IMG/VR virus record: IMGVR_UViG_3300044797_000098 | Coordinates: 62,001 to 126,000 of that record | Length of the DNA: 64,000 nucleotides | Direction: 5' to 3' (one strand) | Part shown: positions 3-63,775 of the stretch, piece by piece | How the letters are laid out: every line of letters begins with the position of its first letter | How positions within the stretch are numbered: the stretch's first letter is position 1 | Made by a program: the position numbers and the translations under genes | Notes under the pieces: generated by a model | Told to the model about the DNA's origin: nothing | Databases searched by the model: none | What the model saw: only the letters and a program-made list of their open reading frames with translations

Positions 3-3000
3 ACAAATAGTGATTGGGAACCAACGAGGACATTTGCTTTTGAGGTTCAACCAAATCCTTCATGGTCTCAGACAATTTGGTATATTGATCCACAGAGCAC
101 ATTTGGCGGTAATGACGCTAATGATGGACTGACTGCCAGCACACCAGTAAAAACCTGGGCACAAGTTATTTTACGATTTGGAACTTATTCTCCGCTATTA
201 AATCAAAATACCACATTTATATTTTTATCTAATCATACAGATAATAGTGATCCTGTTATATTTACGCCATATCTTGGTGGCAATGGAATCAATGTTGTAA
301 TAACAGGTGTATTGAATTCATCTAATCAAGTTTCAACCGGTGCATTTTCTGGATTGATCGCAAAAAATCGTAATACTGGGACATTACTGACCACAACATT
401 AACGAATGCGCCAGTTTCTGGATGGTTCGTGCATGACACAACTAATGATGGTTATTGCTGGGTATACAAAAACCCCAGTTCAAATGTTGCCGTTTTATCT
501 CAACCAATGGAATCTTCGGTTAGTGCTATTGGAATTGGTAATGCTTTCCCGTCAGAAATTAATAATACCGATGGTTATGATATCTACATAGCTTATGAAC
601 CTGTACACGTTAATATTACACAAATTACAACTCAATCTTCTGCTTCAGAAGAAAGTTATACTGCTGGTAGAGTAATCATACAAAATCTAGTTATTTTTGA
701 TCCTGGTAGTGATGATAATGATAGTGTCATACTTGGAAATTATGTAGCCCTTGTAGAAACAAGAATAGATAGATATTCCGTAATATATCAAACTGAATTA
801 TCAAGCGAGCTTCCAATTTTAAATTGTTTCATAGGAAATGCCGTAATAAGTGCGACAGCACTATTGCAAGGTGGTATCTTAGGAAGAGCATACGATGCAG
901 TTGCAGTAGAAATAACTCAGGGGTTTTATCCACAACTTGATGCAGATATTATATTAGCATATGATTTAGTTGCACTTTGTAATCTATATGTAGGATATTA
1001 TTATATTGAGCAGGGCGCAAATCTATTTGCATACCCTACAAGTAAGATAGAATGTATTGATTCATATGTTGATGGCTATGGAGCTGTGTGGGGGCCAGGT
1101 AATATAAATGTTGAATCTATTTACAGATACAATAATCCAATAGATAATACAGCAGTAGGATATTTTAAAAATACCGGTGGTATTACAATAAACAGTAAAT
1201 CAACAGCATATTCTTTTGACCCAAGCGGCAATGGTATATGGCGAAACAGAATACCAATTACTCCAGCACAATTGGATGCGTCATTATCAAGTGGTGGCTT
1301 TGCTGGGACAGCATCGATACCTGGCGGCGGAATAATTACTGCTTTTGGTAATGATGCACACGGATATAACTATGCTCCAAACGATGCATTAATGGTATCC
1401 AATTGGTGCATAGATCCACAATTCGGTAATGATTCGAATGATGGCAAAACATCCTTAACTCCAATTCGTACTTGGGCAGAGTTAGTTAGACGATGGGGAA
1501 CATCATCTCCAGTATTCAATGTACCGGTTATAATTACTTTCTTATCTGATCAGCTAACCAATACCGATCCGGTATATCTTAATCCTGCTTTCGGTGTAAA
1601 TGGCAGTCTAACTTTAATAGGTACACTACAACATCAATTTAATGTCAACTTAACTGGCGTTATACCTAAAAATCCTTCTGCCACTGGACCTAATCCAGCC
1701 GGTTTATTGCAAGCTAATTTAACAACCGCTGCCGATGGTTATGCCGGGTATTTGCTAATCAATAATACTCAGGGCGGAGCCGTTTGCTGGATTGATAGTA
1801 TCTCAAGTGGAATGGCAGTGTTGACCAATCCATACGTTCCTAATTACCCAACATATAATGCTTTACCTAATCAGGTCAATACCTTTACCAATGGTGATGC
1901 GATTTCCATTTATCAGCCCACCAAGATTTATGTCAGCGGATTTACCCAAGGTATTGGCGCTGGAACTATTCTTTTCGTTCATTTGTGGTTAGTTGATCCA
2001 ACTGGGACGGTCGGAAATACCGAAGTAGCTTTACCGCTTTCCTCCTCTTGTACCGAAACAAGATTAGATGTTTATGCTTTCTTCAATTTCGTTACCACAG
2101 AAGCTCCTGTTAATGCTTTGGTCAATTCTTGGTGCAACGGAGGTGTGATCATTTCTGGTGGTAGTATGATAGGTGGGGCTGCCGGGACCGCTTTGGTCAC
2201 TGCGGTTTCTATCAATGGATTTATTGACGGAGATGCCATTATTCACGGAGCAGCTTCCTTTGGTGACGTTCAAGGACAAGGGTTTTTTACTAATCAAATT
2301 GGTTCTGTTTATATAGACAATTCCAGCTTAGCTATTCCCGATAATACTACATACATTATTGGAGATTTATTATTGGACAGTGATGCTGGTACCAATTATA
2401 CCTACGGCATATATGGTCAATATAAATTAAATTTGAACGAGGTTTCCTGTAGACTAACCTATATCAACCCAAGCTCTGCTACATCGTGGTTTAAGGGAAC
2501 TCCTACTTTGCTAATGGATGGTCTTCCTTTTGCTAATGCTTATGATCGAACTCAAGATCCGGGAGTTTGGCATCCGGCTCGCGCCCTCACTCCAGCTAAC
2601 TTGGACTTACCAGTTATTCAGGGTGGATTTGGCGGATTAGCCATAGGTGACGGTGGTTCTATTATTAGTGATGGCTATCAAACCTCGTCTATTATCGTTC
2701 CTAGTTTATCTTTCTTCGTAGATCCTTCTAATGTTAGCGGGCTAGCTTCCGATGGTTATGATGGTCTAACTTCATCAACTCCTATTTTGACAATCGCCGA
2801 ATTGAATCGTCGATATCGTGGTCGTACTGTTACCACTATAAATACAGTTACCTTTATGAGTGATGTGCTATCTGATGATGATTTATTAGATCTATCAACA
2901 GTTAGTTTGGGAACCGGCGGAGCAATAAATTATGTTGGCACTCCGCATATTACACATACAGGAACATTAACCTCTGGAACAGTACCAATAAATCCAGCAA

Positions 3001-4073
3001 TAAATCAACGACAAGTAATAGAAGATACCGGTCTTGGAGTCAATGGATGGACTGGTTACGACGGATATTATATATCTAGTATTAGCGATAGTTATGATGC
3101 TTGGATAGTTAAGGTAGATGGTACAGTAAGCGCGGACAAGGCATTTACCACGCGCCCATATAACCTTTCAACTAATGAAATTGGCATGTTTTCAAGCGGA
3201 TCCTCCTATCAAATTGCTATTGGTAGTAATATGATGATTGGAAACATTTCTCCAACAGTATTAACACCGCCACAATCATTTGGTAACCAGGGAGTTACCT
3301 TCAAGGATTTCAATTTTATTCCAACTGGTGGAATACCATTAATAATAGATAATACTGGTATTGTATTTACTAGATGTAAGTTTTCAGATCCTTTTGCAAC
3401 TGCTTATGGTAATGATAGTACTACCTTATATAATTGTAATTTAGGTAATTCTCCAGTAGGTCCGCCAAGTACGTACTTGAGTACGCAAGGTATTCAATCA
3501 ACATCAATAGGTGGTATTGGTATGTTTGCTGGATTGTATAATTCATACGGCTCGGATTTTTGCCAATTTTTACTTTTAGGCTTGGATGTATATGTAACGG
3601 GATGGGGACTTTTAATAGATCCATTTGCTATTTCATCATTAACTATCACGGGTTACAATAGTGTTGGTGTGTTCAGTGGTGTTCAAATTCATGACACGAT
3701 TTCTCCAACAGCAGCTATTCTTTGTAATAAAACCATAATATTTGGCGATAGTACGATATCACCTGCTGCACCATATAATGCTGGTTTTATTTGGGGGACT
3801 GGAAATGATGGATATGGTATGGTGATTTCATCTGGTGTTACGGTCACTTTGGATAGCACTATAATACCAATTCTAACAGGAGCATTAGGAGATTTTGCTT
3901 TTGATAACAAGGGCGGACTAATCACTACGGGTCGCGCATGGAATGAATTAACCGGTACCTGGACAAGTCCAATAAACACTAATTGGGCTAATTTTATATT
4001 ATCAATTGGATCCAGTGGATTTGGATATAACGCTCACAATGTAGCAAATAATACCGCTCTCGTAGCAATATAG
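3..4073 (+). CDS. Large virion fibre/adhesin-like protein, 5'-partial, built from three tandem ~440-aa modules
   Basis: The frame is open from base 3 (TNSDWEPTRTFAF...), so 312 is not the true start. Three modules open with WYIDPQ..GNDANDGLTASTPVKTW, WCIDPQFGNDSNDGKTSLTPIRTW and FFVDPSN..SDGYDGLTSSTPILTI, and each closes with a W..(I/L)T.AN/Q....GF motif. G/S/T/N-rich and K/E-poor. Confidence 0.7.
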   Translation, partial: TNSDWEPTRTFAFEVQPNPSWSQTIWYIDPQSTFGGNDANDGLTASTPVKTWAQVILRFGTYSPLLNQNTTFIFLSNHTDNSDPVIFTPYLGGNGINVVITGVLNSSNQVSTGAFSGLIAKNRNTGTLLTTTLTNAPVSGWFVHDTTNDGYCWVYKNPSSNVAVLSQPMESSVSAIGIGNAFPSEINNTDGYDIYIAYEPVHVNITQITTQSSASEESYTAGRVIIQNLVIFDPGSDDNDSVILGNYVALVETRIDRYSVIYQTELSSELPILNCFIGNAVISATALLQGGILGRAYDAVAVEITQGFYPQLDADIILAYDLVALCNLYVGYYYIEQGANLFAYPTSKIECIDSYVDGYGAVWGPGNINVESIYRYNNPIDNTAVGYFKNTGGITINSKSTAYSFDPSGNGIWRNRIPITPAQLDASLSSGGFAGTASIPGGGIITAFGNDAHGYNYAPNDALMVSNWCIDPQFGNDSNDGKTSLTPIRTWAELVRRWGTSSPVFNVPVIITFLSDQLTNTDPVYLNPAFGVNGSLTLIGTLQHQFNVNLTGVIPKNPSATGPNPAGLLQANLTTAADGYAGYLLINNTQGGAVCWIDSISSGMAVLTNPYVPNYPTYNALPNQVNTFTNGDAISIYQPTKIYVSGFTQGIGAGTILFVHLWLVDPTGTVGNTEVALPLSSSCTETRLDVYAFFNFVTTEAPVNALVNSWCNGGVIISGGSMIGGAAGTALVTAVSINGFIDGDAIIHGAASFGDVQGQGFFTNQIGSVYIDNSSLAIPDNTTYIIGDLLLDSDAGTNYTYGIYGQYKLNLNEVSCRLTYINPSSATSWFKGTPTLLMDGLPFANAYDRTQDPGVWHPARALTPANLDLPVIQGGFGGLAIGDGGSIISDGYQTSSIIVPSLSFFVDPSNVSGLASDGYDGLTSSTPILTIAELNRRYRGRTVTTINTVTFMSDVLSDDDLLDLSTVSLGTGGAINYVGTPHITHTGTLTSGTVPINPAINQRQVIEDTGLGVNGWTGYDGYYISSISDSYDAWIVKVDGTVSADKAFTTRPYNLSTNEIGMFSSGSSYQIAIGSNMMIGNISPTVLTPPQSFGNQGVTFKDFNFIPTGGIPLIIDNTGIVFTRCKFSDPFATAYGNDSTTLYNCNLGNSPVGPPSTYLSTQGIQSTSIGGIGMFAGLYNSYGSDFCQFLLLGLDVYVTGWGLLIDPFAISSLTITGYNSVGVFSGVQIHDTISPTAAILCNKTIIFGDSTISPAAPYNAGFIWGTGNDGYGMVISSGVTVTLDSTIIPILTGALGDFAFDNKGGLITTGRAWNELTGTWTSPINTNWANFILSIGSSGFGYNAHNVANNTALVAI

Positions 4074-4980: not shown

Positions 4981-5595
4981 CTAATTTTGATATATCATCA
5001 ATGTAATTTCTTTTAATTTATTTTCTAGATCTGACCTATTTATTTTATCTAACTCAAAATGCAATGATTTGAACCCAAGTTTTTCACCACCACGCACATT
5101 TTCAATTCTATCATCTAAATATAAGCATCCTTTAAATTCCGGATTCATGTCTAAGAATGTTTTATAATATAAGAAACTGGGTTTTCTTGCCCCAACCTCG
5201 CAACTAAAAAACTTTATACTATAGTGGTATAAAAAACCACCTAAAATATTTCCCATCAATGCAGCGTGCTCTATTCCTATATTGCTCAGCAGCGCTATTT
5301 TAACGTCTTCTTCTAATAATTTTTCTAAAAACCCCACAACAGTGGTATCTGCGGTAATTACTTTATTCCATTCTTCTATTAAATTTTGTATGATAATGGG
5401 CGATTTAATCTTAAAATGATCTCTAAGTTCGTCCGATATTTGGGTCAAACCCATATCGTGTAACTTTGTGGTTCTATGTAAGAAATAATTTACATCCTCT
5501 AATGGAAGATTAAGTGTTTTAGATAATTCGTTTAAAAAATTATCAAACTTTACATTGCAAACAACATTACCAAGATCAACCGCCAAATATTTCAT
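4981..5595 (-). CDS. HAD-superfamily phosphatase (YihX/glucose-1-phosphatase-like)
   Basis: Motif I VDLGNVV, motif II LSN, motif III RKP, motif IV LDD..EN. Confidence 0.85.
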   Translation of the reverse strand: MKYLAVDLGNVVCNVKFDNFLNELSKTLNLPLEDVNYFLHRTTKLHDMGLTQISDELRDHFKIKSPIIIQNLIEEWNKVITADTTVVGFLEKLLEEDVKIALLSNIGIEHAALMGNILGGFLYHYSIKFFSCEVGARKPSFLYYKTFLDMNPEFKGCLYLDDRIENVRGGEKLGFKSLHFELDKINRSDLENKLKEITLMIYQN

Positions 5596-6545
5596 AGCTC
5601 TCCTAAGTATTCCGATATAAATTTAACTTTTTCATTTAATTCTATTTCTATTTTATTGGACTGAGTAAAATTATCCGATATGCATCCAAAATTATAATGC
5701 CTATTTACCATTGATATAATAATGCTTTCTATATCGTCGTATCTTGGATATGTTATATTATATTTTTGATTATAGAATGCATCCGCTGCAAACACGGCAG
5801 TTCCATCTGATACAAAATATTTACAATTTTCAATATATTGCTCATATATGGAATCTTTTGATATATCCTCTATCTTTAGATCATCAAAAGATTCATTCAT
5901 ATACGGTGAAAATAATATAGAGTTTTTATTTTTCAACTCATTTATAATATTTTTATTTGATTTTAGTAACGCTAAAAAATAATCAATTTTTTTATTTCCA
6001 TATCCCAGAATAAAACTTGGGCGCGCCCACTCATAGTTATTGGAAATAATGTTATTATATTGAGAATCACAAATATGTGATAATACAAATCGTCTATTGG
6101 AATTATTCAATAAATTTAAAATATAACCATTTCTTTTTGGACTGGAATCAAGTAAATGAAAATAGTTTTTATGTATTCCTAAATTATATTTCACATCATT
6201 ATTCATAGCATAATAAAAATTAATTGGACTGAACTGCCATAATTTTATATTTAATTCCAGTGCTATTGTACTTGTATAAATCTCAAAATCAGAAATTATT
6301 AGATCCGGAGCAAATCGCTTAATCTCATTAGAATAATATGTATAATTTCCATTAAAAGAAATCTCTTCTGGATTGGTAAAATTGAGCAAGCTATCAAGCA
6401 TATAATCTGCATCGAGATCGCCAAGCGATTTTTTAAATGCAGCGATTTTTATGTTATAATTTTTATGCTGAATAGATTGTAAAAATCGTTTTAATTGGTA
6501 ATATGAACCAATTCTATTTCCAGCACTATATAATATTTTTAGCAT
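5592..6545 (-). CDS. Glycosyltransferase-like protein (GT-B fold, MJ1255-like), divergent
   Basis: MLKILY.A.N start, PDLIISDFE motif and a C-terminal SDG..F..DA.Y..K pattern. Confidence 0.5.
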   Translation of the reverse strand: MLKILYSAGNRIGSYYQLKRFLQSIQHKNYNIKIAAFKKSLGDLDADYMLDSLLNFTNPEEISFNGNYTYYSNEIKRFAPDLIISDFEIYTSTIALELNIKLWQFSPINFYYAMNNDVKYNLGIHKNYFHLLDSSPKRNGYILNLLNNSNRRFVLSHICDSQYNNIISNNYEWARPSFILGYGNKKIDYFLALLKSNKNIINELKNKNSILFSPYMNESFDDLKIEDISKDSIYEQYIENCKYFVSDGTAVFAADAFYNQKYNITYPRYDDIESIIISMVNRHYNFGCISDNFTQSNKIEIELNEKVKFISEYLGEL

Positions 6546-7578: not shown

Positions 7579-8784
7579 TTACTTAGAAACCGAATCCGCT
7601 GCTGTCAAACCGGTAATAGCAGCATATAAAATACCGCTTTGCCCAGATGCTTCTCCGGCGCAAAACATATTTTGTATATCTGTTTCTAAATTATTTTTAA
7701 TATTTATTTTTGGAATTGATGGTAAAATAGTCGGAACGTGGTAATAACCTTTGCTTATAACTTCTGGCATAAATTGCCCTATTTGTTTAATAGCGCCGGG
7801 TAACCAATTATATTCTGGAATAATTGATATTTTACTTTTATTTTTTAATATGAGAGAGACTTTTTCTTTTATTATTCTGTCATTCGTTAATATAAATACT
7901 AATTGACCAATTCTATTAGTCTGCTCAAATCCATTATTTTCGAAATGTCTAGTGCCTATTAAATTAAATGATACGTTATTAGATTTCCATCTGGCTTCGT
8001 TGCTTCTGAATGAGGTAATTGCCATATCCACATGATCTTCCGGAATAACAGTTCCGCTCCATGACATTGGGCCTATTTCTAATTCGCAATTCGTAATTGA
8101 ACAATTTGATTTATTAAAATCTTTCATTAAATGTGAGTTTAATTCAATTCTGACCCCAAACTTTGATACATTATTATCTGTAATTATATTTAATGATTTA
8201 TATAAATCACTTGTCCAACGCCAACCGCTTCTACCAGTACAAATTATTAATTTTTTGCACGCTATTTGTTTTGTTGGAGATGTTATTATGAAACCTTTTT
8301 TATTTTTTACAACGCTGGTAATTTCTTCATCAAAACATAATGATATTTTATTTTCAATATCATTAACTATTTTTTTTGATAGTGCGTGTATTTCTTTTGG
8401 AAAGATTTGTACATAATCGTTTTTAATTATTTCAAACCCGTTTTTTTTGATTTTTTTATCTAAATTTATTTTAGGTCCCTGGTCTTTAATTATAGTTAAA
8501 TCAAATATATTTTTAACATAATTATTGAACCATTTTGAGGCTGTATTTGTTTTACGCGTGCCTATTAATTGTAATACTTTATCAATATCTGATTGATATA
8601 ATTTTCCATCGCCAGTTGGAAGTGTTCCGAGAAATCCGGTCATTTGAGACCGTCTTTTTCCCGGAGGAGATCCCTCATCGAAAAGTATAATTTTCATTCC
8701 TTTATGTTCTTTTGCCAATTTAAGAGCAGCAAAAGTTCCAGAAACACCAGATCCTATAATAGCAACATCAAAATTATTAGCCAT
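7579..8784 (-). CDS. FAD-dependent oxidoreductase (COG2509/HI0933-like)
   Basis: Rossmann motif VAIIGSGVSG, CTGRSG and a C-terminal ET....FCAGEASG..GI..AA.TG. Confidence 0.8.
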   Translation of the reverse strand: MANNFDVAIIGSGVSGTFAALKLAKEHKGMKIILFDEGSPPGKRRSQMTGFLGTLPTGDGKLYQSDIDKVLQLIGTRKTNTASKWFNNYVKNIFDLTIIKDQGPKINLDKKIKKNGFEIIKNDYVQIFPKEIHALSKKIVNDIENKISLCFDEEITSVVKNKKGFIITSPTKQIACKKLIICTGRSGWRWTSDLYKSLNIITDNNVSKFGVRIELNSHLMKDFNKSNCSITNCELEIGPMSWSGTVIPEDHVDMAITSFRSNEARWKSNNVSFNLIGTRHFENNGFEQTNRIGQLVFILTNDRIIKEKVSLILKNKSKISIIPEYNWLPGAIKQIGQFMPEVISKGYYHVPTILPSIPKINIKNNLETDIQNMFCAGEASGQSGILYAAITGLTAADSVSK

Positions 8785-14845: not shown

Positions 14846-14846
14846 C

Positions 14847-55600: not shown

Positions 55601-55855
55601 TTGATTTCCATTATTACTATCTGACGGTTGCGATTGAATACTGATTGGTTTGCCATCTAATAACCCATTAGCAGATTCTGAATTAAATAATACACGCTGA
55701 ATCAACGAATCTGGCAAAACACCTGAACCAAAATGACTATCGATTATTCCAGACTGTATTATATTGTCGTGGGTTTGCTCTAATGTTAAATTGGTATTAT
55801 CAACATTCATCGTATCGAAAAATAAATTCTGTGGTGAAGAAACAGGGATTCGCAT
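52622..55855 (-). CDS. Large structural protein with two dockerin/EF-hand-like motifs
   Basis: 1077 aa, beta-rich; GDVNGDGIVDDNDL and SDINGDMILNATDI; lies in the baseplate gene run. Confidence 0.6.
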   Translation of the reverse strand: MRIPVSSPQNLFFDTMNVDNTNLTLEQTHDNIIQSGIIDSHFGSGVLPDSLIQRVLFNSESANGLLDGKPISIQSQPSDSNNGNQLQIELCGSKASGNRTVKVLIIGLDFQNNLQYDRFTFDRNEKQLSSKHYRSILTLLFNDFIGAANQSLNLGGVITIKEANPLTLSRDCIMISQDVEPNLFFRDFFVSTGSTLAGTLAAALPSYNIDNLDISTAPLSYASIIENDVSSQVAQKFLASTNNIQKITLLFSVINETTPSNLVWTGDLLISLYPLQSTVSCPTDITPQAPIDFDPSNIPLAQLSVNYSTLLASGIQLNTVPQPVDFIFSNTPVGSGLVIQSGTYYAVTVKRAGSADTCQIQLAVGTNKASNTWETLFNGSVWVDVPEQSLWFQVWTDSAKVSDGQAYDAGNGVFVPKTQINPTTGLTQDYVLNDIQFVRNDLYYALLQAITVDSVPVQSERTGEPVFTQQQFEPSITLLNATSLANIQNVSEPLIIGTISDQNVKTYNAFNSTLTAAFHEYGMVGNQIVIKVITDPTDGYRYDQNIIELVSLLVNGSLNGAKIIPNTANPSFYYKISKAEYISMIYGDVNGDGIVDDNDLALAQQLATVNLNIIPSYSQYIQQTELFVADGYLQWQVLDPSLNIIASGSDGILVPNPSNGAQANFGSASANFNSISNLGGDTFAIFNSVTSPGNNGSFSIVNLISNNDITIQKQYYTSDTILEIMRSDINGDMILNATDINYISNYVNAVAPIPATTSPANKIGTSFNAIRLTLEKYIDRNDDYPSNGTNRGDTLHPLPDVYLDGYTLFANQNLQYNPLSFSIMSQLVWDQSSVVVNSNPRLVQASFNYQTGYTNPLCYVPGVISQTFPRAQPFDPGRNDFFISNNLIVNNGGQFLRPDGYFMKMDYEMSTILFEIPEVSFDTEHSVNLLTDFIADVTGTGYTNLGYRAMKFADCTNVTLNALNLNQIRFGTAVQSFSPQLDGIDPQCITGIIVDGKIGVSINYSTGLLTLNFTNLYQDPVKQTLNTKIEVTVYLKKAGWNNTPIYVNSTKTQNIFGVPNPPPTNTVCPDPSIVIIS

Positions 55856-55870: not shown

Positions 55871-56902
55871 TTATGTCACATTATTACGATTACGATCATA
55901 TTTACCGATTTTAGCAAAATAACATTGTTGGCACCAACTTCCGTCTTTTATCACTCCCGGTGGGTAGGCATCCCAAATATGGTTATTTTGACATTTAAAT
56001 TTCATAGATTTCCAATTATAGTATTCTGATAGGCATTCACCACCGTTGTTTTTAGCGATCATTCTAGCATCTTCAATAGTATATTTTCTATTTGTTGGTA
56101 CCAAAATTCCATTACTATCAAAACTGATTTTACCGTAGTATGCCTTACTTATATCTATGACAATATCATCAAAATTATTTGGTAAATTAATTTTTAATTC
56201 CATACATTGATTTTTAATTAATTGTTTTAAATCACTTAATTTAGTCATCGAAAATAACTCTGGTATAATTATTATTTTTGCCCCCATATTTTTTGCTAAT
56301 TGTATTTTATATACATCATTATATTTTAGTCTTTCAAACGCATCATTATTAATTTGTGAAAGTTTTACGTAGTGCTGTCTTCCATTATGTTCAAAACCTA
56401 TACCTAATTCTTTACAATATCCATCTAATTCTAATTTTCTACCTTTATCACCCATTAACCATTCTGGCCTAATCGATGGAAATGGTTTTCCAAAAATTTG
56501 CTCAAAATATTCCCTACATATTCGCTCATATAATGAACTTGAACAAATAGAGCACCATTGCCCATATTTTATATCGTTATAGCATCTTTGAAATTCATGC
56601 CCATAAAAACATTTTATTTTTAATGGCTTGTGAATGTGCTTATATTCACTTAAACATGTACCGCCCTTAGCTTCTATTGTGTCATTTACTTCTTTTTGTG
56701 TAAATTTTCTTGTACCACCACAGTCGGGACACCATCTTCCGCTCTTAATCGAGTAATATGGAGCGGACCACACATATCCACATTCAAAACATTTCCATTC
56801 CATTTTAGTACGCGCAGTTATATATATAACACTCAAACATTGTCCATTTTTTGATTTTGCTAAATTTTGCGCATCCTCAATGGTTAATTTTTTTGGCATC
56901 AA
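55871..56902 (-). CDS. Zinc-ribbon-repeat endonuclease (homing-type)
   Basis: G.CLS..Y......W.C..H.W........WC..C repeats flank LELDGY....FEHNGRQHY. Confidence 0.8.
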   Translation of the reverse strand: MMPKKLTIEDAQNLAKSKNGQCLSVIYITARTKMEWKCFECGYVWSAPYYSIKSGRWCPDCGGTRKFTQKEVNDTIEAKGGTCLSEYKHIHKPLKIKCFYGHEFQRCYNDIKYGQWCSICSSSLYERICREYFEQIFGKPFPSIRPEWLMGDKGRKLELDGYCKELGIGFEHNGRQHYVKLSQINNDAFERLKYNDVYKIQLAKNMGAKIIIIPELFSMTKLSDLKQLIKNQCMELKINLPNNFDDIVIDISKAYYGKISFDSNGILVPTNRKYTIEDARMIAKNNGGECLSEYYNWKSMKFKCQNNHIWDAYPPGVIKDGSWCQQCYFAKIGKYDRNRNNVT

Positions 56903-56914: not shown

Positions 56915-59900
56915 TTACATATAATTAATATACACTTGGCTATTTGCTGGTTTCAATGTATTTATCAATTCTTCGAGCACCTGTTTTACTACGGGATTAT
57001 CTGCTAATATATCAAAGGAATCATAAACATTAATAGTAAAATCACTTAGTCCAGTGGTGCTATTTTTTAGTGTAGCAAAATTAGTATTTTTAGTAACTAA
57101 TGTATCAAAATCTAATAGTAAGGTTGTATATAAATCTGGTGTTACTGGTAAAACTATATTTGTATTTGTGCTATAATTTACATCTAATGATTCACCAAAT
57201 GGCATAAATAACGGTCGAGATTGATTACTAATTCGTAAATTATCTATTAATGCAAATGCCCCATTAGTTCCTGAAAAATCTGATCCTATGAATAATTCGT
57301 TGATAGTATCCTTAAAAACTATGCTTGCCTGCATTGTATTTTGACCAGTAAATGACGAACCGAATACTTGATTTTGACCGTATAATAACCCATTACCAAA
57401 TAGCACGTTTCCTCGTTCGTATCCGTCGACGAAAAACCTAATTTCATCTGTTCCTAATCCAGAATTAACTTTAAATGTTGCTTTTAATCGATGCCAAGTT
57501 CCCTTAGACCAATAGGCAGGAACCCGTATTTGATATACGACACTAGATGCTGTTATACTAAAATTAATATATCCGCTTGGATCTTTAAATATGGATATTC
57601 TATCACCATTAGTTCCAGTTGGGATATAATTGACAATAACAGGAGTTTGTTGATTTGGAAGCGCTCTATTTAGATATAATGTTTGCATGTCTGATGCAAT
57701 AACTCCGCCAGCAAAATAATCCACGCTCTGGCTACCAATTTGTAATTTTACATTAAGTACTTTTGATACTCTTCCAGAGACTTTTACCGTGGCGTTATTG
57801 GTGCTAATTACTTGTTGGCTTACAATACCAGAAGCATCAAAATAATATCTATAATTTGGATCATTTCCAGTATCATAAATTGGATTGACCCAAAACTCTA
57901 TCGTTCCCTCTTGCTTAGACGTTAATATACCAGTATTATCTATTATCATTGGTTTATTAGTAAGTACAATACTTTTACCAAAATTATCATTTACACTAAT
58001 AGATGATTGAATAAATTGATCTGATGCAGTTGTATAGATAGATGAATTATTAGTAAATGGGAATGAATCAAAATGTAGTAACATTAGTGTGTTGGCTGTT
58101 GGTTGTAATGCTTTCAACGAATTAAAATCCTTAGTAATTGTTTCTTGGTTAGCACCAACCATTTCACCAACTCTTACGTCAGTTAATTTTTCAGATACAA
58201 TCATTAATTCATCTAACGTACCATTTAAGATATTATGACCAGTAAAATCAGTACCAACATATGAATATAAATTAGTTACGCCCATAGGAATAGTCAAATA
58301 GGTATAATATTCGAACTCATATAATCCCTGAACTAAGTTGTAAGGCTGTCCTGGAACGGTTAAATTTTCTAATGTAAAATATCCATTTTGCAGACCGCTC
58401 CTATATGTACTTACTGTTAGTATTTCATATAGACCACCAGATGCAATAGGAGATGGTAATGCCGGAGATATTGTTATACTTTTGTAATCTGATGAAACAG
58501 CAGTTATTTGATACTGACCAGCACTAACTGATGGAGAAGTTATTATCAAATAGTTTCCGATTGTTTGTGAGGAAAAGAAATTATTAAGATCTGTAACCGT
58601 ATTACCGCTACCAGTTAAAGTATTACCAACAGCAGTTTGATAGCTATATCGTATTGTTGGTACAGTAATACTATTTTCTGCAACTGTTATTGGACTAACT
58701 TCCTGAATAGAAATAACAACACAGTTTTTAGTCGGATCTATTGGAGTACAATTTACTGCTACATAACTAACTGAGGTAAATTGTGATATCGTTGATAGCG
58801 TGGTATTTTCAGTAAAAGTTAGTATTTCTGGTGATGAGGTGTTATTAGTTCCGTAAATTGAAACGATTACGGGACTAGAATAATCAATATTAGTACCAGA
58901 TATATACACAGAAACAGTTCTACCGTTATCAGATATGGATGGCTGATCTGTATTTATATTATTAGATATAAAGGTATTACCAACTAATGTAGAATTACCC
59001 GGCCCAATATTATATCTATCAAGCAAAATATGAGTAATTTTTACATCTGATAGTAAAATTGGAGATGGTAATCTTGTTTTTATTATATTTGTTGTATTAC
59101 CCCATATATAATATTTTTGATTAATTAATCTATGATTTAATCCAAGTGTTCGTATTAATACGATATCATTTGGCAGAGCTTTATCCAGTATCGTTAGAGT
59201 TACAGTATCATCTGAGTTTCTAATTATACTATATGCTGGATGCAGTGCTCTGAGCCCAGGTATTTCTTGTTCCTTGTTAGAATAAATATAGAATGGTGCA
59301 GAAACATAACTAGCCGGCATGTTGTCATTTAAAATTAGATTCTGTCCATTAACAGACAAAATAACATAATTTGCAGCAAAACCGCTTTCAACTATCCTAA
59401 TTAGGTATCCTGGTAGTACGCCCAATGTTGAGAAATTAGTGGAAGGTGAGCTGACAATATTATATCCATCTGTTGTTTGCAGATCTGTTCCGTTTAATGT
59501 TGAATGCAATAATGATATTGCGATATTTGGATATAAATCTATTTCTGTTAATACATTGAATGAGGTTTTATTTACCGAGAATGAAGCCCCAGTCATCAAC
59601 AATGGCATCGGTGATGCCAATGTTAGTGTATTACCGTTTACATTTAATATTAGATATCCAGAAATAGAAAATCCGGGCTCTTCGATATATATTGTGCCAC
59701 CATTAACAACACCATAAGCACTAAAATTTAATGATGATGTTACAATATTTGAGCCAAGCGTTGTGACCAAATCAGTTGATGAAACGATAGCTGATGTTAT
59801 TAATCCAACAATTTCTTCCGGATCTACTGTTCTAAACTTCTCATGAAGATATGGTCCTACGTTACTTCCATATTTTATTATATTTGGTACCTCTTGTCCA

Positions 59901-62900
59901 TCAATAAATAAATGTAATTCATCTCTATTATTTTTTGTATTGATTGCCCACGATGCTGCGACGTGATGCTGCTGTCCTGCCATCCAAGAAGAAATATCGG
60001 CATCCACCGTAGAGTTTCTACCATCTCTATCGAATACTCTAAAATTTAAATATCCGCTTTCATCTTTATATATAGAAAATCTATTATGATCTTTATCTTT
60101 TCCAAAATCAAAAATATAATGATGATAGTCTGCTATAAATGTTATCCCCTGGTTTACATTATTGATTCCTGATATACTATAAGATACAGTATTATTTGCA
60201 CTAAATATCCTGTCTGATGGTGGTTGCACGTGTGCTAATGACCTTACATTATAGAAGTTTCCGTCCGTTTTTATTGAAACCTGATAGTTTTTTATACCAT
60301 ATCCATCAGCATATCCGTCTAAAATATCCACATACCATCTATTTATATTTGTGTATGGATCATTGGTCAGGTAAATAAATACTCCATCTTTACTTTTGTT
60401 GGGTATTCCAAGAACAGAACTATTTTTAATTACAGAAAATGAATATCCGTCTGAGAACTCTGGATGGAAAGCGCCTGCACCAAGGAAAATATTTTGTGGC
60501 AGTAACGGTTGTCCATTTTTAGTTATTCTAAATGTTAATTCAGATTGGTTATCTATTCCATTCCAATTAGGGATTACCCAACATTCAAAAGAGCCCTGTT
60601 CGAGCCTAACATTAGAAACAGTCGGAAATTTAATAATCTGGCCAGGCGTGTTCACAACAACGCCGTCATCATATTTAGCGGTAACTAATTGAAAAGAGCC
60701 ACTCGTAGTTATAGGCTCTGGATTTAATAAATCACTTCCAAGTGACCAATTTTGAAATGCAGATTCTATTATTTGAGGTGGAGTGTGAACAATAGTATTT
60801 ACTATGTTGCTCATAGATTCAATTGTTGGTCCCTGAGGAAAAGAGCTCATTGCAGCTATAAGAGCGTCCCTATATCTTTCTCGTTCAAATGAAACATCTA
60901 AACTATTTAGTATTGGTATATTAATTAGTGTTCCGAAGTTTTTCAATAGCGCGTCTCGTAATGCGCCAACCTTATAGCTAGCATAGTATGTATCACCAGC
61001 ACTTAATGCCATAGATGTACTAAAATCTAATATATTATCACCATATTCATAACTAATAATTATTTCATCAGCAAGATATGTATAATCGATATAATATCCA
61101 CCCTTATCATAATCTACAATAACTCTATATAGATTATTTATTGTGTATGAATATATTAATTGAATTGCATCACCAATTTGTGGAGAATTAATATTTGGTA
61201 ATATTAATTTTAATTGATTGCCTAAAATAATTGTTCCAGAATCATTCCATAATTGAGCGCTATCTGAAAGTCTTGTTATCTGTATATTTAGCGTAATATT
61301 AGGAGAAAGATATTGTAATGAGGTATTAGCTAATATATAATAATTTGTTCCATCAAATTGAATTGAATGGTATTCAGTAAATAATAGAGAGCTTACAGTT
61401 ATATTTTTTCCATTAAATGTGGAAGCCTGAGAAAAATTAATTGGATTTATATTATTTAATAAATCTTCATATTCATATAATCCTCTTATATATCCAATGT
61501 AATTAGATACACCCGGAGAAAATATAGCATTTATAAATACGCCAACTTGATTATTATATACTTGATATGGATATTCAGAGTTTCCATTCAAAAAACCTTC
61601 GTTTGCAATATCGAATGTTGTTGGTAATATACTGCCATCAGTAAAACTTGTATATGAAAATTGTTTTGTTTTTTGTTCTAATGTATTTAATTGATAGTAG
61701 ATATCATCAACTGAGATTAAATGAGGATTTATTGGCGAAATATACCCGCGCTTATACGATATAGAACCAACCGAGTATGATTGAGATGATGATACATAGC
61801 ACCATACTATACCATTAATATAATCTATTTGGTAATCACCTACATTTTGTAATCTTGATGTATTTTGTGTTTCATTAGAAGAGTTGTCAAAATATATTTC
61901 TTGAATAAATATGTTAATATTAGAAAATGATACGCTTGAATTAAATGATGAACCTATTTCGTCTTGTGAGGAGGAAATTAAATTATTATTATTTAGAAAA
62001 AATTTAAATATATTTCCATCTGTCAATGTCATCACAGCACCAACAGAAAGAGTTTCATTTGTAATATTTTGAAATGATGCTCTTTCACCAGTTAGACTAA
62101 CTATATTTGGAGCTTTTATATAACTAAAAAATATTTGATTATTTGTCCATCGTAATATACTATACACTTCACCGGTGGTTTGATTAAATATTCTGAATAC
62201 ATCTGTCACTGGAAAATTTAATGGCTGTATAGTATTTACTGCTATCAATCTATTATCTATATATTCATTTAAAACTTCGATATGCGATGATACGATATAA
62301 TCTATGCCCTGTGCCAATACCTCTTCATAATTAAATATTATGTTGGCAGATGATCCTATTAAACTACCATTTGGCAATCCTACAAGCTCAAAACTATCTG
62401 AATCATATACATAATCTATTTGTGATTTAAAAACATATCTGTATGTATATGTTGCCAATGGAGGATATGCGCCAGTTCCAGTTTTATTATTATCTTGTCC
62501 ATACACATATACGTTTCCTGAACTATAATCTATTGAGTATTCACCAATTTGAGATGGCAAATAATCTAATCTAAATGGTAATTCATACAAAAATGCAGGA
62601 TGCGGTATGTTTGAATCTGGCGGTTCATTCGGATCGGTAAATACAACACTGCCTATACTGCCAATAGTATCATTATTTGTTACTATTGGAGCGTGCATTA
62701 GTGTAAATGTATTTTCTAGCGGTGGTAGTACCTCACGACCAGACGAAAGAACTGTATCTACAACTAGTGATGTTGGATCGAGAACTTTTCCAGTATCTTT
62801 ATATTCATAAGTTACCTGAACATAAGCAATATTTTCTGTGGAAAAATTAGGATCATTTAATATACCTCTATTTAATATAACTTGATTATCTAATAATAAT

Positions 62901-63775
62901 TCGTATGTAAAAGAGTTATCTGGATCATACAGTGAATTAAGTATTTGATATCCATACTCCTGTATATTATAGTTGTATGGTGGCAATGAAGAATCATATA
63001 CGAATAAAACACTATTCAATATAATTACAAATCTTTTAGTAAAATTAATCGTAAAAGTATCTTGATTAAATGTTCCAGTTTTATCAACAGTAACGAGAGG
63101 TAGGTTTTCTGAATAACTAGTTGCCTGCAACGATACAGGATAGTTCGGAAACAACGAAATGGATGTAATATTTTGTACAGGATCACTTGTTGGATTAATG
63201 CCAACCCTTAAAATTTCATACGCGCCTTCCTCATTAAGTCTGTCATATGGACCGTTGCCTCTTGTTTTAAATTCATCAATTATTGTAGTTGTTAAATAGT
63301 TTTCATTTTTTGATTGTCTTATATCATATAGTGATTTAGAAAATATAGTTGATAGACCTTGTATATAATTTGATATTACTGATGGGCTGTCTAAATTATA
63401 TACATTGTTTCTAAGAAAATTATTTAGATATATTTGTACTGGGTTACTTGAATCTAATGGCCCTAATATTAATTGTCTATTTGTTATTCCATCATTTAAA
63501 ATAAATGCATCACCATTTAATGAACTAAATGGCACTTGACTGGTTGATTGAAAAATTATGAAATATGCTGCTTGTGGTACTAATGGTTGTGTCGTTATGT
63601 ACAATAAATCATTTGAAACAGTAACAATTAGGACTGATGGGTTAGAAACACCCGGAGTTTGAGCACTTATTATTATATTACCAGTATTTATGTTTTCATT
63701 TAAAGATTCTGAAAACTTGGCAGTAATATTAGTGCTATCTACTACTGTTACAGATATAATTCTTAAATTAGCCAC
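56915..63775 (-). CDS. Very large baseplate/tail-associated protein with LamG-like domains
   Basis: 2286 aa; GSFECWV.P...HHVAASW...LFIDG and GTIEFWVNP...WHRL...FFVDG...IDNLRIS; follows the baseplate-J-like gene. Confidence 0.7.
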   Translation of the reverse strand: MANLRIISVTVVDSTNITAKFSESLNENINTGNIIISAQTPGVSNPSVLIVTVSNDLLYITTQPLVPQAAYFIIFQSTSQVPFSSLNGDAFILNDGITNRQLILGPLDSSNPVQIYLNNFLRNNVYNLDSPSVISNYIQGLSTIFSKSLYDIRQSKNENYLTTTIIDEFKTRGNGPYDRLNEEGAYEILRVGINPTSDPVQNITSISLFPNYPVSLQATSYSENLPLVTVDKTGTFNQDTFTINFTKRFVIILNSVLFVYDSSLPPYNYNIQEYGYQILNSLYDPDNSFTYELLLDNQVILNRGILNDPNFSTENIAYVQVTYEYKDTGKVLDPTSLVVDTVLSSGREVLPPLENTFTLMHAPIVTNNDTIGSIGSVVFTDPNEPPDSNIPHPAFLYELPFRLDYLPSQIGEYSIDYSSGNVYVYGQDNNKTGTGAYPPLATYTYRYVFKSQIDYVYDSDSFELVGLPNGSLIGSSANIIFNYEEVLAQGIDYIVSSHIEVLNEYIDNRLIAVNTIQPLNFPVTDVFRIFNQTTGEVYSILRWTNNQIFFSYIKAPNIVSLTGERASFQNITNETLSVGAVMTLTDGNIFKFFLNNNNLISSSQDEIGSSFNSSVSFSNINIFIQEIYFDNSSNETQNTSRLQNVGDYQIDYINGIVWCYVSSSQSYSVGSISYKRGYISPINPHLISVDDIYYQLNTLEQKTKQFSYTSFTDGSILPTTFDIANEGFLNGNSEYPYQVYNNQVGVFINAIFSPGVSNYIGYIRGLYEYEDLLNNINPINFSQASTFNGKNITVSSLLFTEYHSIQFDGTNYYILANTSLQYLSPNITLNIQITRLSDSAQLWNDSGTIILGNQLKLILPNINSPQIGDAIQLIYSYTINNLYRVIVDYDKGGYYIDYTYLADEIIISYEYGDNILDFSTSMALSAGDTYYASYKVGALRDALLKNFGTLINIPILNSLDVSFERERYRDALIAAMSSFPQGPTIESMSNIVNTIVHTPPQIIESAFQNWSLGSDLLNPEPITTSGSFQLVTAKYDDGVVVNTPGQIIKFPTVSNVRLEQGSFECWVIPNWNGIDNQSELTFRITKNGQPLLPQNIFLGAGAFHPEFSDGYSFSVIKNSSVLGIPNKSKDGVFIYLTNDPYTNINRWYVDILDGYADGYGIKNYQVSIKTDGNFYNVRSLAHVQPPSDRIFSANNTVSYSISGINNVNQGITFIADYHHYIFDFGKDKDHNRFSIYKDESGYLNFRVFDRDGRNSTVDADISSWMAGQQHHVAASWAINTKNNRDELHLFIDGQEVPNIIKYGSNVGPYLHEKFRTVDPEEIVGLITSAIVSSTDLVTTLGSNIVTSSLNFSAYGVVNGGTIYIEEPGFSISGYLILNVNGNTLTLASPMPLLMTGASFSVNKTSFNVLTEIDLYPNIAISLLHSTLNGTDLQTTDGYNIVSSPSTNFSTLGVLPGYLIRIVESGFAANYVILSVNGQNLILNDNMPASYVSAPFYIYSNKEQEIPGLRALHPAYSIIRNSDDTVTLTILDKALPNDIVLIRTLGLNHRLINQKYYIWGNTTNIIKTRLPSPILLSDVKITHILLDRYNIGPGNSTLVGNTFISNNINTDQPSISDNGRTVSVYISGTNIDYSSPVIVSIYGTNNTSSPEILTFTENTTLSTISQFTSVSYVAVNCTPIDPTKNCVVISIQEVSPITVAENSITVPTIRYSYQTAVGNTLTGSGNTVTDLNNFFSSQTIGNYLIITSPSVSAGQYQITAVSSDYKSITISPALPSPIASGGLYEILTVSTYRSGLQNGYFTLENLTVPGQPYNLVQGLYEFEYYTYLTIPMGVTNLYSYVGTDFTGHNILNGTLDELMIVSEKLTDVRVGEMVGANQETITKDFNSLKALQPTANTLMLLHFDSFPFTNNSSIYTTASDQFIQSSISVNDNFGKSIVLTNKPMIIDNTGILTSKQEGTIEFWVNPIYDTGNDPNYRYYFDASGIVSQQVISTNNATVKVSGRVSKVLNVKLQIGSQSVDYFAGGVIASDMQTLYLNRALPNQQTPVIVNYIPTGTNGDRISIFKDPSGYINFSITASSVVYQIRVPAYWSKGTWHRLKATFKVNSGLGTDEIRFFVDGYERGNVLFGNGLLYGQNQVFGSSFTGQNTMQASIVFKDTINELFIGSDFSGTNGAFALIDNLRISNQSRPLFMPFGESLDVNYSTNTNIVLPVTPDLYTTLLLDFDTLVTKNTNFATLKNSTTGLSDFTINVYDSFDILADNPVVKQVLEELINTLKPANSQVYINYM

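What the first reader, a model, noticed from the sequence alone, without database searches (positions are those of the whole stretch)
3..63775. DGY tripeptide saturates virion proteins: candidate sequon for a phage-encoded virion modification (glycosylation) system
Seen (hand counts of D-G-Y): 8 in ORF 3-4073 (codons at 447, 570, 1071, 1734, 2670, 2751, 3060, 3807), 4 in 9004, 9 in 10286, 1 in 14847, 3 in 17509, 4 in 52622 and 5 in 56915 (including tandem DGYADGY), about 34 in total. I found only one in the non-structural proteins, and it is the family motif LELDGY of a nuclease. A rough composition estimate predicts well under 1 per 1200 aa. Codons vary (GAT/GAC, GGT/GGC/GGA), so selection is on the peptide and not on a DNA site. 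DGY is gained independently at homologous positions: NDANDGLT vs SDGYDGLT, YYDSTLN vs YFDGYTN, SEDGGSY vs SQDGYAY, VDGVSYP vs LDGYSLP, FIDGQE vs FVDGYE. It occurs in unrelated folds and is absent from the foreign-looking 15685 ORF and the Ig-repeat protein. Established: some phages glycosylate their virions, and Tyr O-glycosylation exists in bacterial S-layers. Inference: DGY is an acceptor or recognition motif in exposed beta-turns, plausibly for the phage's own glycosyltransferases. Other Tyr/Asp modifications, cross-linking or a docking motif are alternatives.
Basis: partly seen in the sequence, partly recalled or inferred. Interest (0 to 1): 0.92.

Follow-up and report, generated by a model that had tools for sequence, protein, structure and literature searches.

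The report
DGY motif on jumbo-phage tail proteins
The outer tail proteins of a large group of uncultured giant phages carry the three-residue motif Asp-Gly-Tyr about 13 to 20 times more often than chance, it is gained again and again at new positions, and it tends to travel with a phage glycosyltransferase gene, so it is probably a tag for a new kind of virion modification, though that is not proven.

Summary
I count 34 in-frame DGY in 9,052 aa of fibre and outer-baseplate proteins, against 1.6 expected. After collapsing repeats, 27 independent contexts remain (p ~1e-23). 41% of DG dipeptides are followed by Y, against 2.9% of other G. The non-structural ORFs have only one DGY, in an HNH nuclease.

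The motif is strict: DGF, NGY, EGY, DAY and DSY are at baseline. It acts at peptide level, since the DNA pattern occurs only in frame. It is clade-wide: across about 120 related jumbo-phage loci, the two big baseplate proteins hold 1,251 DGY against 97 expected, while neighbouring non-virion ORFs hold 29 against 34.

Positions turn over heavily, and DGYxDGYx arrays appear in loop insertions. Core tail proteins are close to baseline.

A GT4-type glycosyltransferase (47838-48959) lies downstream of the baseplate genes in 74 of 79 dereplicated loci. Five DGY-free homologues on four branches lack it at that position. Three DGY-rich loci also lack it in the sequence available, and three GT-positive lineages are DGY-poor.

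A phage-encoded Tyr-glycosylation sequon is the best reading (about 0.4). An unmodified binding motif is the main rival. No prior description was found.

The parts
3..4073 (+). Large fibre-like protein. The window holds only part of it; the full ORF is 1643 aa in L022 with 9 DGY. The window part has 8 DGY.
   Evidence: No Pfam or PHROG hit. An internal paralogous segment aligns GNDANDGLT with ASDGYDGLT.
4981..6545 (-). Sugar-related genes inside the fibre cluster: a HAD phosphatase like glucose-1-phosphatase (4981-5595) and a weak MJ1255/VC2487-family GT-B-like protein (5592-6545). These are candidate accessory modification genes.
   Evidence: In L196 this island, together with the RNase T and FAD oxidoreductase genes, directly follows the p1077 homologue.
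7579..8784 (-). FAD-dependent oxidoreductase of unclear substrate, in the same island.
   Evidence: Only generic Rossmann/FAD matches, all below curated cut-offs for any equivalog.
8971..10257 (+). Fibre protein of 428 aa with 4 DGY. It contains internal repeats in which YYDSTLN aligns with YFDGYTN.
   Evidence: Weak PHROG match to a tail fibre proximal subunit.
10286..14845 (+). Fibre protein of 1519 aa with 9 DGY. Five of them lie in repeated ..LDGYSLPSP.. shaft modules. Other copies of the module carry VDGVSYP.
14847..15683 (+). Glycine-rich protein like a tail fibre assembly protein, with 1 DGY.
15685..17184 (+). 499-aa protein in a GC-rich island, with 0 DGY.
17509..18714 (-). Fibre protein of 401 aa with 3 DGY. 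It is a paralogue of the 428-aa protein; EDGGSY there aligns with QDGYAY here.
43197..45284 (-). NDP-sugar 4,6-dehydratase/epimerase (RmlB/GDP-mannose-dehydratase type) interrupted by an intein.
   Evidence: Intein-less homologues of 317-329 aa occur in relatives.
45281..46120 (-). GT2 glycosyltransferase.
46121..47134 (-). Conserved 337-aa phage protein of unknown function. It is kept next to DGY-free p1077 homologues, so it is not the DGY-linked gene.
47173..47838 (-). GT2 glycosyltransferase.
47838..48959 (-). GT4-type GT-B glycosyltransferase ('GT1_373'), the candidate DGY-recognising enzyme. It is found downstream of the baseplate genes in 74 of 79 dereplicated loci.
   Evidence: AlphaFold model pLDDT 94. 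The best structural match is chlorovirus B736L, 3oy2, TM 0.71. Invariant residues are kept in all orthologues.
48989..52615 (-). Ig-like repeat protein (Big_3_5 x10) with 0 DGY. It is present only in close relatives.
52622..55855 (-). 1077-aa outer-baseplate protein ('p1077'). It has multiple beta-sandwich/CBM-like domains and a dockerin-like Ca loop. 4 DGY.
55871..56902 (-). HNH homing endonuclease inserted between the two baseplate genes. It has 1 DGY (LELDGY), consistent with chance.
56915..63775 (-). 2286-aa giant baseplate protein with two LamG/ConA-like domains and 5 DGY, including DGYADGY. It follows the Baseplate_J gene that lies just outside the window.

Best explanation
DGY is a short linear motif under recurrent positive selection in the exposed loops and beta-turns of the distal tail proteins of a broad clade of uncultured jumbo myoviruses. 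The proteins concerned are the fibres, the giant LamG protein and the 1077-aa outer-baseplate protein.

The most likely mechanism is that DGY is the recognition and acceptor motif (sequon) of a phage-encoded, cytoplasmic GT4-type glycosyltransferase (47838-48959). This enzyme would glycosylate the Tyr hydroxyl while or after the proteins fold. In most lineages the two GT2 enzymes would extend the sugar, and the RmlB-like dehydratase would supply an unusual NDP-sugar. A pre-existing Asp-Gly turn becomes a site simply by acquiring Tyr at the next position. New sites also arise as DGYx arrays inserted in loops. The result would be a glycan coat on the outermost tail parts.

Shown: the enrichment, its strictness, its peptide-level nature, the turnover, the restriction to distal tail proteins, the loop bias, the clade-wide synteny with the GT, and the joint absence in several lineages.

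Inferred: that the GT acts on protein, that DGY is what it reads, that Tyr is the acceptor, and what the glycan does.
For: - Enrichment is 21-fold in the window and 13-fold over 433,513 aa of homologues. Adjacent non-virion ORFs are at baseline.
- All three residues are required. In 52,949 aa of pooled homologues DGY occurs 194 times, against DGF 25, NGY 13, EGY 0, DAY 4 and DSY 3, which are all near expectation. A generic beta-turn or aromatic preference would tolerate N-G and F. Requiring the Tyr hydroxyl and the Asp carboxylate fits enzyme recognition.
- Turnover is high: 22 DGY columns among 21 p1077 homologues and 50 among the giant homologues. Typical changes are DGK/T/V/I/E/S to DGY, and arrays such as DGYADGYADGYVDGY appear in loop insertions.
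- 22 of 29 DGY columns fall in loops or insertions of the model, many in low-confidence flexible segments.
- Across about 120 loci down to 24-30% identity the gene order is gp25-like, Baseplate_J, giant, p1077, then the GT4 gene. All 74 dereplicated GT4-positive loci have at least one DGY in the module, median 3.2 per 1000 aa.
- L153 is DGY-rich (24 in 4,096 aa) with the GT4 gene alone, without the GT2, unk337 or RmlB genes.
- DGY-free homologues L146, L148 and L152 keep unk337 (L146 also RmlB) but lack the GT4 gene. The P0071 locus runs straight into UvsW. L147 has neither. These lie on four branches of the tree, and no other tripeptide replaces DGY there.
- The closest solved structure to the GT4 model is a chlorovirus putative glycosyltransferase. 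From my own knowledge, not checked in any paper read here: chloroviruses use virus-encoded enzymes to glycosylate their capsid protein in the cytoplasm.
Against: - No chemistry has been observed. There is no mass spectrometry, no cultured phage and no assay.
- The GT4 fold is generic (PglA, PimA, BshA, MshA and GlgM score alike), and nothing marks a protein acceptor.
- Adjacency is an imperfect proxy for presence in 200-470 kb genomes. L196, L244 and L247 are DGY-rich without a GT4 gene in the 2-10 kb held. L144, L145 and L151 keep a GT4 with all invariant residues but only 0.6-1.2 DGY per 1000 aa.
- Only 3-4 independent contrasts exist. None goes the wrong way, but a sign test cannot reach 0.05.
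- DGY is not depleted in cytoplasmic phage proteins (29 against 33.7). A promiscuous cytoplasmic tripeptide-reading enzyme might have caused depletion.
- No known Tyr-glycosylation system uses a DGY sequon. The S-layer review states that the sequence around glycosylated residues varies (PMC2943079).
- The GT cluster could serve DNA or host-envelope modification instead.
Confidence: 0.4

Rival explanations
1. DGY is an unmodified functional motif. A Tyr displayed on an Asp-Gly turn acts as a generic 'sticker' for weak, multivalent binding. The partner could be host surface polysaccharide or environmental polymers, or it could be another tail protein (a docking or assembly motif). The GT cluster does something else, and its loss together with DGY reflects a change of host or lifestyle.
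For: - The motif is restricted to the most distal, exposed tail proteins and is biased to loops.
- Tandem arrays in loops resemble avidity-building repeats.
- p1077 and the giant protein contain CBM-like, lectin-like and LamG domains.
- DGY-rich loci exist without an adjacent GT4, and GT4-positive loci exist with few DGY.
- There is no depletion in cytoplasmic proteins.
- Unrelated viral proteins also use GY-rich low-complexity arrays.
Against: - General stickiness or turn geometry should tolerate NGY, DGF, DGW and EGY, and none of these is enriched.
- The motif is spread over shaft repeats, LamG cores and many unrelated domains, rather than concentrated at receptor-binding tips.
- All five DGY-free homologues with known context lack the syntenic GT4.
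Confidence: 0.3
2. DGY marks a different covalent chemistry at Tyr or Asp. Possibilities include Tyr hydroxylation or oxidative cross-linking (dityrosine or DOPA-like), phosphorylation, nucleotidylation or sulfation, and Asp-Gly succinimide/isoaspartate-based cross-links that harden the distal tail. The enzyme would lie elsewhere in the 406-kb genome or in the fibre-cluster island (FAD oxidoreductase 7579-8784).
For: - The requirement for D, G and Y is strict.
- Asp-Gly is the sequence most prone to succinimide formation (established protein chemistry, from my own knowledge).
- An FAD oxidoreductase, a HAD phosphatase and a GT-like gene are embedded among the fibre genes, and in L196 they are placed directly after p1077.
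Against: - No kinase, sulfotransferase, tyrosinase or peroxidase was found in the window.
- The FAD protein matches only generic dinucleotide-binding regions.
- The gene whose absence tracks DGY loss is the GT4.
Confidence: 0.15
3. DGY is a by-product of shared ancestry, repeat duplication, amino-acid composition or a fold-specific conserved turn. Under this reading there is no selection on the tripeptide itself.
For: Some copies are duplicates: five LDGYSLPSP modules and three paralogue pairs. The structural proteins are G-, D- and Y-rich beta proteins.
Against: - 27 independent contexts remain after collapsing repeats, against 1.64 expected.
- The odds ratio for Y after DG is 23.
- Positions are mostly not conserved among homologues.
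- DGY-free homologues have the same folds.
- The motif occurs in unrelated domains.
Confidence: 0.03
4. DGY reflects a nucleic-acid signal (a DNA modification or restriction site, or an mRNA element) that happens to read as DGY.
For: None beyond the coincidence that the motif maps to a 9-nt degenerate pattern.
Against: There are 34 in-frame matches and 0 in the other two frames or antisense. The genes lie on both strands. Codons are mixed.
Confidence: 0.01

Closest known systems
Mycobacteriophage virion glycosylation (Freeman et al. 2023, Cell Host Microbe 31:1216, as cited and summarised in PMC12619734)
   Same: Phage-encoded glycosyltransferases are proposed or shown to modify the phage's own virion proteins inside the infected cell.
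   Different: There the glycans sit at the C-termini of the capsid and tail-tube subunits (PMC12619734), and the paper read here mentions no tripeptide sequon. Here the candidate sites are scattered DGY turns in fibres and outer baseplate, and the conserved enzyme is a GT4-type GT-B. Modification is not demonstrated here.
Chlorovirus glycosyltransferases (the chlorovirus putative GT B736L, PDB 3oy2, is the closest structure)
   Same: A putative glycosyltransferase encoded by a large DNA virus. 3oy2 is the best structural match to the GT4 model (TM 0.71) and a sequence-profile hit. From my own knowledge, not checked here: chloroviruses glycosylate their major capsid protein in the cytoplasm at non-canonical sites with their own enzymes.
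   Different: That is a eukaryotic virus, and as far as I know the capsid linkage is to Asn. B736L's own acceptor is not established. Sequence identity is about 15%.
Bacterial glycosylation sequons with an upstream acidic residue (Campylobacter D/E-X-N-X-S/T; Bacteroidota D-(S/T)-(A/I/L/V/M/T))
   Same: A minimal sequon in which Asp lies one or two residues before the acceptor, sited in exposed loops and easily gained or lost by point mutation (from my own knowledge).
   Different: Those act in the periplasm through lipid-linked glycans and oligosaccharyltransferases, with Asn or Ser/Thr acceptors. No OTase-like gene was seen in the window. Here the acceptor would be Tyr and the enzyme soluble.
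Tyrosine O-glycosylation of S-layer proteins (Paenibacillus alvei SpaA, Thermoanaerobacter; PMC2943079)
   Same: Gal- or Glc-to-Tyr O-linkages on an exposed prokaryotic surface protein, with rhamnose-containing adaptor saccharides. The phage cluster includes an RmlB-like gene.
   Different: Two to four sites per protein, with a variable sequence around the glycosylated residue, and transfer during secretion by an O-OTase. Here there are up to 13 sites per 1000 aa with a strict tripeptide.
HxH iron-binding motifs of the T4 gp37 fibre tip (a short structural motif repeated along a fibre)
   Same: A very short motif recurring many times in tail fibre proteins (from my own knowledge).
   Different: HxH sits at fixed positions of one fold and coordinates metal on the trimer axis. 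DGY turns over between positions and occurs in non-fibrous domains (LamG, beta-sandwich).

Membership tests
Protein glycosylation sequon (generic definition) | Short motif enriched in substrate proteins relative to non-substrates of the same genome | tested here: met
   34 against 1.64 expected in distal tail proteins. Across the clade, 1,251 against 96.8 in the baseplate proteins, and 29 against 33.7 in neighbouring non-virion ORFs.
Protein glycosylation sequon (generic definition) | Contains an acceptor side chain, and substitutions that remove it are not tolerated in the motif | tested here: met
   Tyr is required. DGF occurs 25 times against 13.7 expected, while DGY occurs 194 times against 11.7 expected. 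This shows only that Tyr matters, not that it is an acceptor.
Protein glycosylation sequon (generic definition) | Sites lie in solvent-exposed loops or turns | tested here: inconclusive
   22 of 29 DGY columns fall in loops or insertions, against 58% loop background in the AlphaFold model (pLDDT 76.8). No coordinates or accessibility values were available.
Protein glycosylation sequon (generic definition) | Co-occurs phylogenetically with a dedicated glycosyltransferase | tested here: inconclusive
   All 74 dereplicated GT4-positive loci have DGY. Five DGY-free homologues lack the syntenic GT4 (four branches). Three DGY-rich loci show no GT4 in the sequence held. Only 3-4 independent contrasts exist.
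Protein glycosylation sequon (generic definition) | A glycan is covalently attached at the motif | not testable with these tools
   This needs mass spectrometry or an enzymatic assay. The phage is uncultured.
Mycobacteriophage-type virion glycosylation | Glycans on the C-termini of the capsid and tail-tube subunits | not tested
   The capsid gene was not retrieved. The tube-like 209-aa protein (L259 1596-2222) has no DGY. Its C-terminus was not examined for Ser/Thr tracts.
S-layer-type Tyr O-glycosylation (OTase-dependent) | Membrane O-oligosaccharyltransferase with a lipid-linked glycan pathway (initiating transferase, flippase or ABC exporter) | tested here: not met
   No such domains were found among the window ORFs scanned with Pfam or NCBIfam. 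Only soluble GT2/GT4 enzymes and a dehydratase are present. The rest of the 406-kb genome was not seen.
GT4 family retaining glycosyltransferases (GT-B fold) | Two Rossmann-like domains and an EX7E motif | tested here: met
   Pfam Glycos_transf_1 and Glyco_transf_4 hits. AlphaFold pLDDT 94, and Foldseek TM about 0.7 to PglA, PimA, BshA and B736L. E265 and E273 are conserved eight residues apart.
Fold-specific structural motif (such as fibre HxH boxes) | The motif occupies conserved positions of one domain family | tested here: not met
   Only 1-2 of 22 and 2-3 of 50 DGY columns are widely conserved. The motif occurs in several unrelated domain types.

The most novel reading that the evidence does not exclude
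A large clade of jumbo phages runs a previously unknown cytoplasmic protein-modification system. In it, a soluble GT4 glycosyltransferase reads the minimal sequon Asp-Gly-Tyr and O-glycosylates the tyrosine on folded distal tail proteins. Phage lineages tune the density of their glycan coat by evolving DGY sites in and out of surface turns. This would be the first defined Tyr-glycosylation sequon and the first sequon-directed glycosylation of phage tails.
Probability: 0.35. Interest if true: 0.9.

Novelty: new variant of a known kind. Interest (0 to 1): 0.8.

Why it matters
If DGY is a sequon, it would be a three-residue, portable tag for Tyr glycosylation by a single soluble enzyme. That has obvious value for glyco-engineering. 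It would also give a sequence-only way to read which virion surfaces are glycosylated in uncultured phages.

It would extend virion glycosylation from mycobacteriophage capsids to the host-recognition apparatus of jumbo phages. There a glycan coat could affect adsorption, stability, or recognition by defences and grazers.

Even if the motif is unmodified, it remains unusual. It is a 13- to 20-fold, clade-wide, position-fluid enrichment of one strict tripeptide in one class of proteins. That is a clear example of selection on a short linear motif in phage structural proteins, and it calls for an explanation.

The signal is also easy to test, because one gene (47838-48959) and short DGY-bearing fragments are enough for a first experiment.

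Tried and rejected
- GenBank phage searches with a 22-kb stretch, the 1519-aa fibre and TubZ found nothing. Only the RNR gave distant hits, to Lak-like and crAss-like records, so no annotated relative could be used.
- Pfam, PHROGs, PDB sequence search, the protein atlas and Foldseek gave no firm identity for p1077 or the giant protein beyond LamG, a dockerin-like loop and CBM-like beta-sandwiches. The weak DUF4815 and phi812 baseplate leads were not pursued.
- A triple-DGY DNA scan of IMG/VR was meant to find independent clades. Most large-protein hits turned out to be the same superclade. The rest were low-complexity GYG/DGYG or DGY[DN]x pentapeptide arrays, which I judge to be a different phenomenon.
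- Testing GT2, unk337 and RmlB as the DGY-linked genes: rejected. L153 is DGY-rich without them, and L146, L148 and L152 are DGY-free with unk337 (L146 also with RmlB).
- Degenerate GT4 in DGY-poor lineages: rejected. All invariant residues are kept.
- A replacement motif in DGY-free lineages: none found.
- Sequon avoidance in non-virion proteins: not seen.
- Host assignment from MAG-binned relatives gave contradictory names, Gammaproteobacteria and Bacteroidales. No tRNAs are present in the window.
- Literature searches for DGY, virion glycosylation and Tyr glycosylation found no prior description. The 'moraphage' paper (PMC12619734) concerns a different, smaller jumbo-phage lineage.

Full report
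**What the window is.** The 64-kb window is bases 62001-126000 of IMGVR_UViG_3300044797_000098, a 406-kb uncultured jumbo-phage contig. It has no close relative among GenBank phages. On the left is a tail-fibre cluster (3-18714), interrupted by a small sugar and redox island on the opposite strand (4077-8784). In the middle are replication and metabolism genes: RNR, PhoH-PIN, DnaB, UvsW, a methylase, a GH25 lysin and TubZ. On the right, reading along the minus strand, are a 2286-aa LamG protein (56915-63775), an HNH endonuclease, a 1077-aa protein (52622-55855), an Ig-repeat protein, and then a glycosylation cluster. That cluster holds a GT4-type GT (47838-48959), a GT2, a conserved unknown protein, a second GT2 and an RmlB-like dehydratase with an intein. 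By fetching the contig beyond the window end I found tail sheath, a tube-like protein, a 1641-aa protein, a gp25-like wedge protein and Baseplate_J immediately upstream of the 2286-aa gene. By synteny, therefore, the giant protein and p1077 are outer-baseplate components. This assignment is inferred and not shown.

- Shuffling residues within each protein gives 1.64 on average and never more than 8.
- Among all tripeptides DGY is the extreme outlier in the structural set, and nothing comparable exists in the other genes.
- The two corrections named under 'would refute' do not remove the signal. 41% of DG are followed by Y against 2.9% of other G (odds ratio 23, p 5e-24). After merging contexts with at least 35% flank identity, 27 independent sites remain (p 1e-23).
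- The 9-nt pattern GAYGGNTAY occurs 34 times in frame and never out of frame or antisense, and codons are mixed, so the constraint is on the peptide.

**The motif is strict.** In 52,949 aa of divergent homologues DGY occurs 194 times (11.7 expected). DGF (25), NGY (13), EGY (0), DAY (4) and DSY (3) sit at or below expectation. A turn-forming or aromatic preference would not discriminate D from N or Y from F so sharply.

**It is a property of a clade.**
- Homologues of p1077 and the giant protein from about 120 loci in IMG/VR and other assemblies, down to 24-30% identity, hold 1,251 DGY in 433,513 aa (96.8 expected). The non-virion ORFs downstream in the same loci hold 29 in 231,810 aa (33.7 expected).
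- DGY is the top tripeptide even in the most distant members (L150, L153).
- Positions are fluid: 22 distinct DGY columns among 21 p1077 homologues and 50 among 21 giant homologues, mostly private to subclades. Typical substitutions are DGK/T/V/I/E/S to DGY.
- Loop insertions consist of DGYx arrays, for example six DGY within about 30 residues in L021.

**Where it sits.** Within this genome the core tail and inner baseplate proteins have 4 DGY in 7,288 aa (1.03 expected), against 34 in 9,052 aa for the fibres and outer baseplate. In an AlphaFold model of p1077 (29-sequence alignment, pLDDT 76.8), 22 of 29 DGY columns of the family map to loops or to insertions in loops. Many of these are in low-confidence segments of the C-terminal half. 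The tools gave no coordinates, so exposure is inferred from secondary structure only.

**Link to the glycosyltransferases.**
- The order Baseplate_J, giant, p1077, GT4 is conserved throughout.
- After dereplication, 74 of 79 loci with at least 1.5 kb of downstream sequence contain the GT4 orthologue. All 74 have DGY in the module, with a median of 3.2 per 1000 aa.
- A full HMMER scan of 1.84 billion representatives found only 164 relatives of p1077. Of the 58 full-length relatives, 12 have no DGY. I looked up eight of these 12.
- L146, L148 and L152 run from p1077 straight into the unknown 337-aa gene (L146 then RmlB) with the GT4 missing. The P0071 locus runs straight into UvsW with no sugar genes at all. 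L147 has two unrelated genes there. L149 has no downstream sequence. L144, L145 and L151 retain the GT4 and have 0 DGY in p1077, but 3-5 in the neighbouring baseplate proteins.
- Conversely L153, with 24 DGY in 4,096 aa, has the GT4 as the only sugar gene.
- On a tree of the p1077 family the GT4-negative loci fall on four branches. This singles out the GT4, and not the GT2s, the 337-aa protein or the dehydratase, as the gene that travels with DGY.

**Caveats on that link.**
- Adjacency is not presence. These genomes are 200-470 kb and most contigs are fragments.
- L196, L244 and L247 are DGY-rich with no GT4 in the 2-10 kb available. In L196 the fibre-cluster sugar island sits there instead.
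- The low-DGY lineages keep every invariant GT4 residue.
- With 3-4 independent contrasts, none contrary, the sign test cannot be significant.

**What the GT4 is.** It is a confident GT-B fold (pLDDT 94) with the EX7E pair. Its nearest solved structure is the chlorovirus putative GT B736L, followed by PglA, GlgM, PimA and BshA. Nothing in this identifies its acceptor.

**Interpretation.** The combination points to a specific reader of the tripeptide acting on assembled or folding surface proteins. The elements are strict three-residue specificity that includes a hydroxyl-bearing residue, recurrent gain in exposed turns and loop arrays, restriction to the outermost tail proteins, and joint presence or absence with one soluble GT. 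The most economical candidate is the adjacent GT4, using DGY as a Tyr O-glycosylation sequon. I put this at about 0.4. The main rival (0.3) is an unmodified Tyr-on-a-turn adhesion or docking motif. It explains the location and the arrays but not the exclusion of NGY, DGF and EGY, nor the GT4 pattern. Another covalent chemistry at Tyr or at the Asp-Gly bond (0.15) cannot be excluded. Ancestry or composition and nucleic-acid explanations are refuted.

**Comparison with what is known.** Phage-encoded virion glycosylation is established for mycobacteriophages, at the C-termini of capsid and tail-tube subunits (PMC12619734 citing Freeman et al. 2023). Tyr O-glycosylation is known in S-layers, where the sequence around the glycosylated residues is variable and transfer is by a membrane OTase (PMC2943079). 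That chloroviruses glycosylate their capsid with their own cytoplasmic enzymes is from my own knowledge. No searched paper mentions a DGY motif in phage proteins. If the sequon reading is right, this is a new variant of virion glycosylation, with a new acceptor motif, new target proteins and a new enzyme class. If it is wrong, the enrichment is still an unexplained and unusually clean case of selection on a short linear motif.

**Verdict.** Interest is 0.8.

Noticed in passing
window 43197-45284 (-): The RmlB/GDP-mannose-dehydratase-like gene is split by an intein of about 370 aa (Pfam Intein_splicing, residues 138-490). Relatives L145 and L146 carry intein-free versions of 317-329 aa.
   Followed up: partly
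window 55871-56902 (-) and 40410-41756 (-): An HNH homing endonuclease with a treble-clef zinc finger is inserted between the giant and p1077 genes in this genome only (absent in L002-L004). A second treble-clef protein lies next to TubZ. Copies of this family are scattered through the GT clusters of relatives.
   Followed up: partly
window 4077-8784 (-): An opposite-strand island sits inside the fibre cluster. It holds a HAD glucose-1-phosphatase-like protein, a weak MJ1255/VC2487-family GT, an RNase T-like exonuclease, an FAD oxidoreductase and three small unknown ORFs. In L196 the same island directly follows the p1077 homologue in place of the GT4 cluster.
   Followed up: partly
window 14001-17200: A GC-rich island (0.47 against about 0.33) covers the Gly-rich tail-fibre-assembly-like gene and the DGY-free 499-aa ORF. 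This suggests recent acquisition.
   Followed up: no
L065 1375-6457; L086 5682-10820: Unrelated viral contigs carry long arrays of the pentapeptide DGY[DN]x. L065 has three tandem paralogues of about 440 aa with 11-15 DGY each. L086 has a 1713-aa protein with 48 DGY in its N-terminal third. Function is unknown.
   Followed up: no
L091 3192-3809; L052 12682-13134; L053 1691-2419; L074 210-560; L106 13465-13947: Small viral proteins with low-complexity (S/D)GYG repeats, resembling Gly/Tyr-rich low-complexity domains. They occur in contigs of varied GC content.
   Followed up: no
window 35678-36574 (-) and homologues in L008, L012, L015, L016, L029, L061, L127: A 298-aa protein of unknown function recurs, often in more than one copy, next to the baseplate and GT genes of relatives. 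It may be a mobile or duplicated gene.
   Followed up: no
L251 7994-12085 and homologues (L003 2-3121 and others): In several loci, including this genome's own (L001), the window protein that best matches the gene upstream of the giant protein is p1077, at 30-42% identity. In this genome that gene is the 1364-aa Baseplate_J protein. This hints at a shared module between neighbouring baseplate genes. Which part of the protein matches was not checked.
   Followed up: no
L257, L258: Two relatives of this phage module are binned into bacterial MAGs labelled Gammaproteobacteria and Bacteroidales. The labels conflict, so the host remains unresolved.
   Followed up: partly
window 41740-43152 (-), 20515-21309 (-): A TubZ/PhuZ-like tubulin is conserved next to the GT cluster across the clade. 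A methionine aminopeptidase (Peptidase_M24) gene is also present.
   Followed up: no
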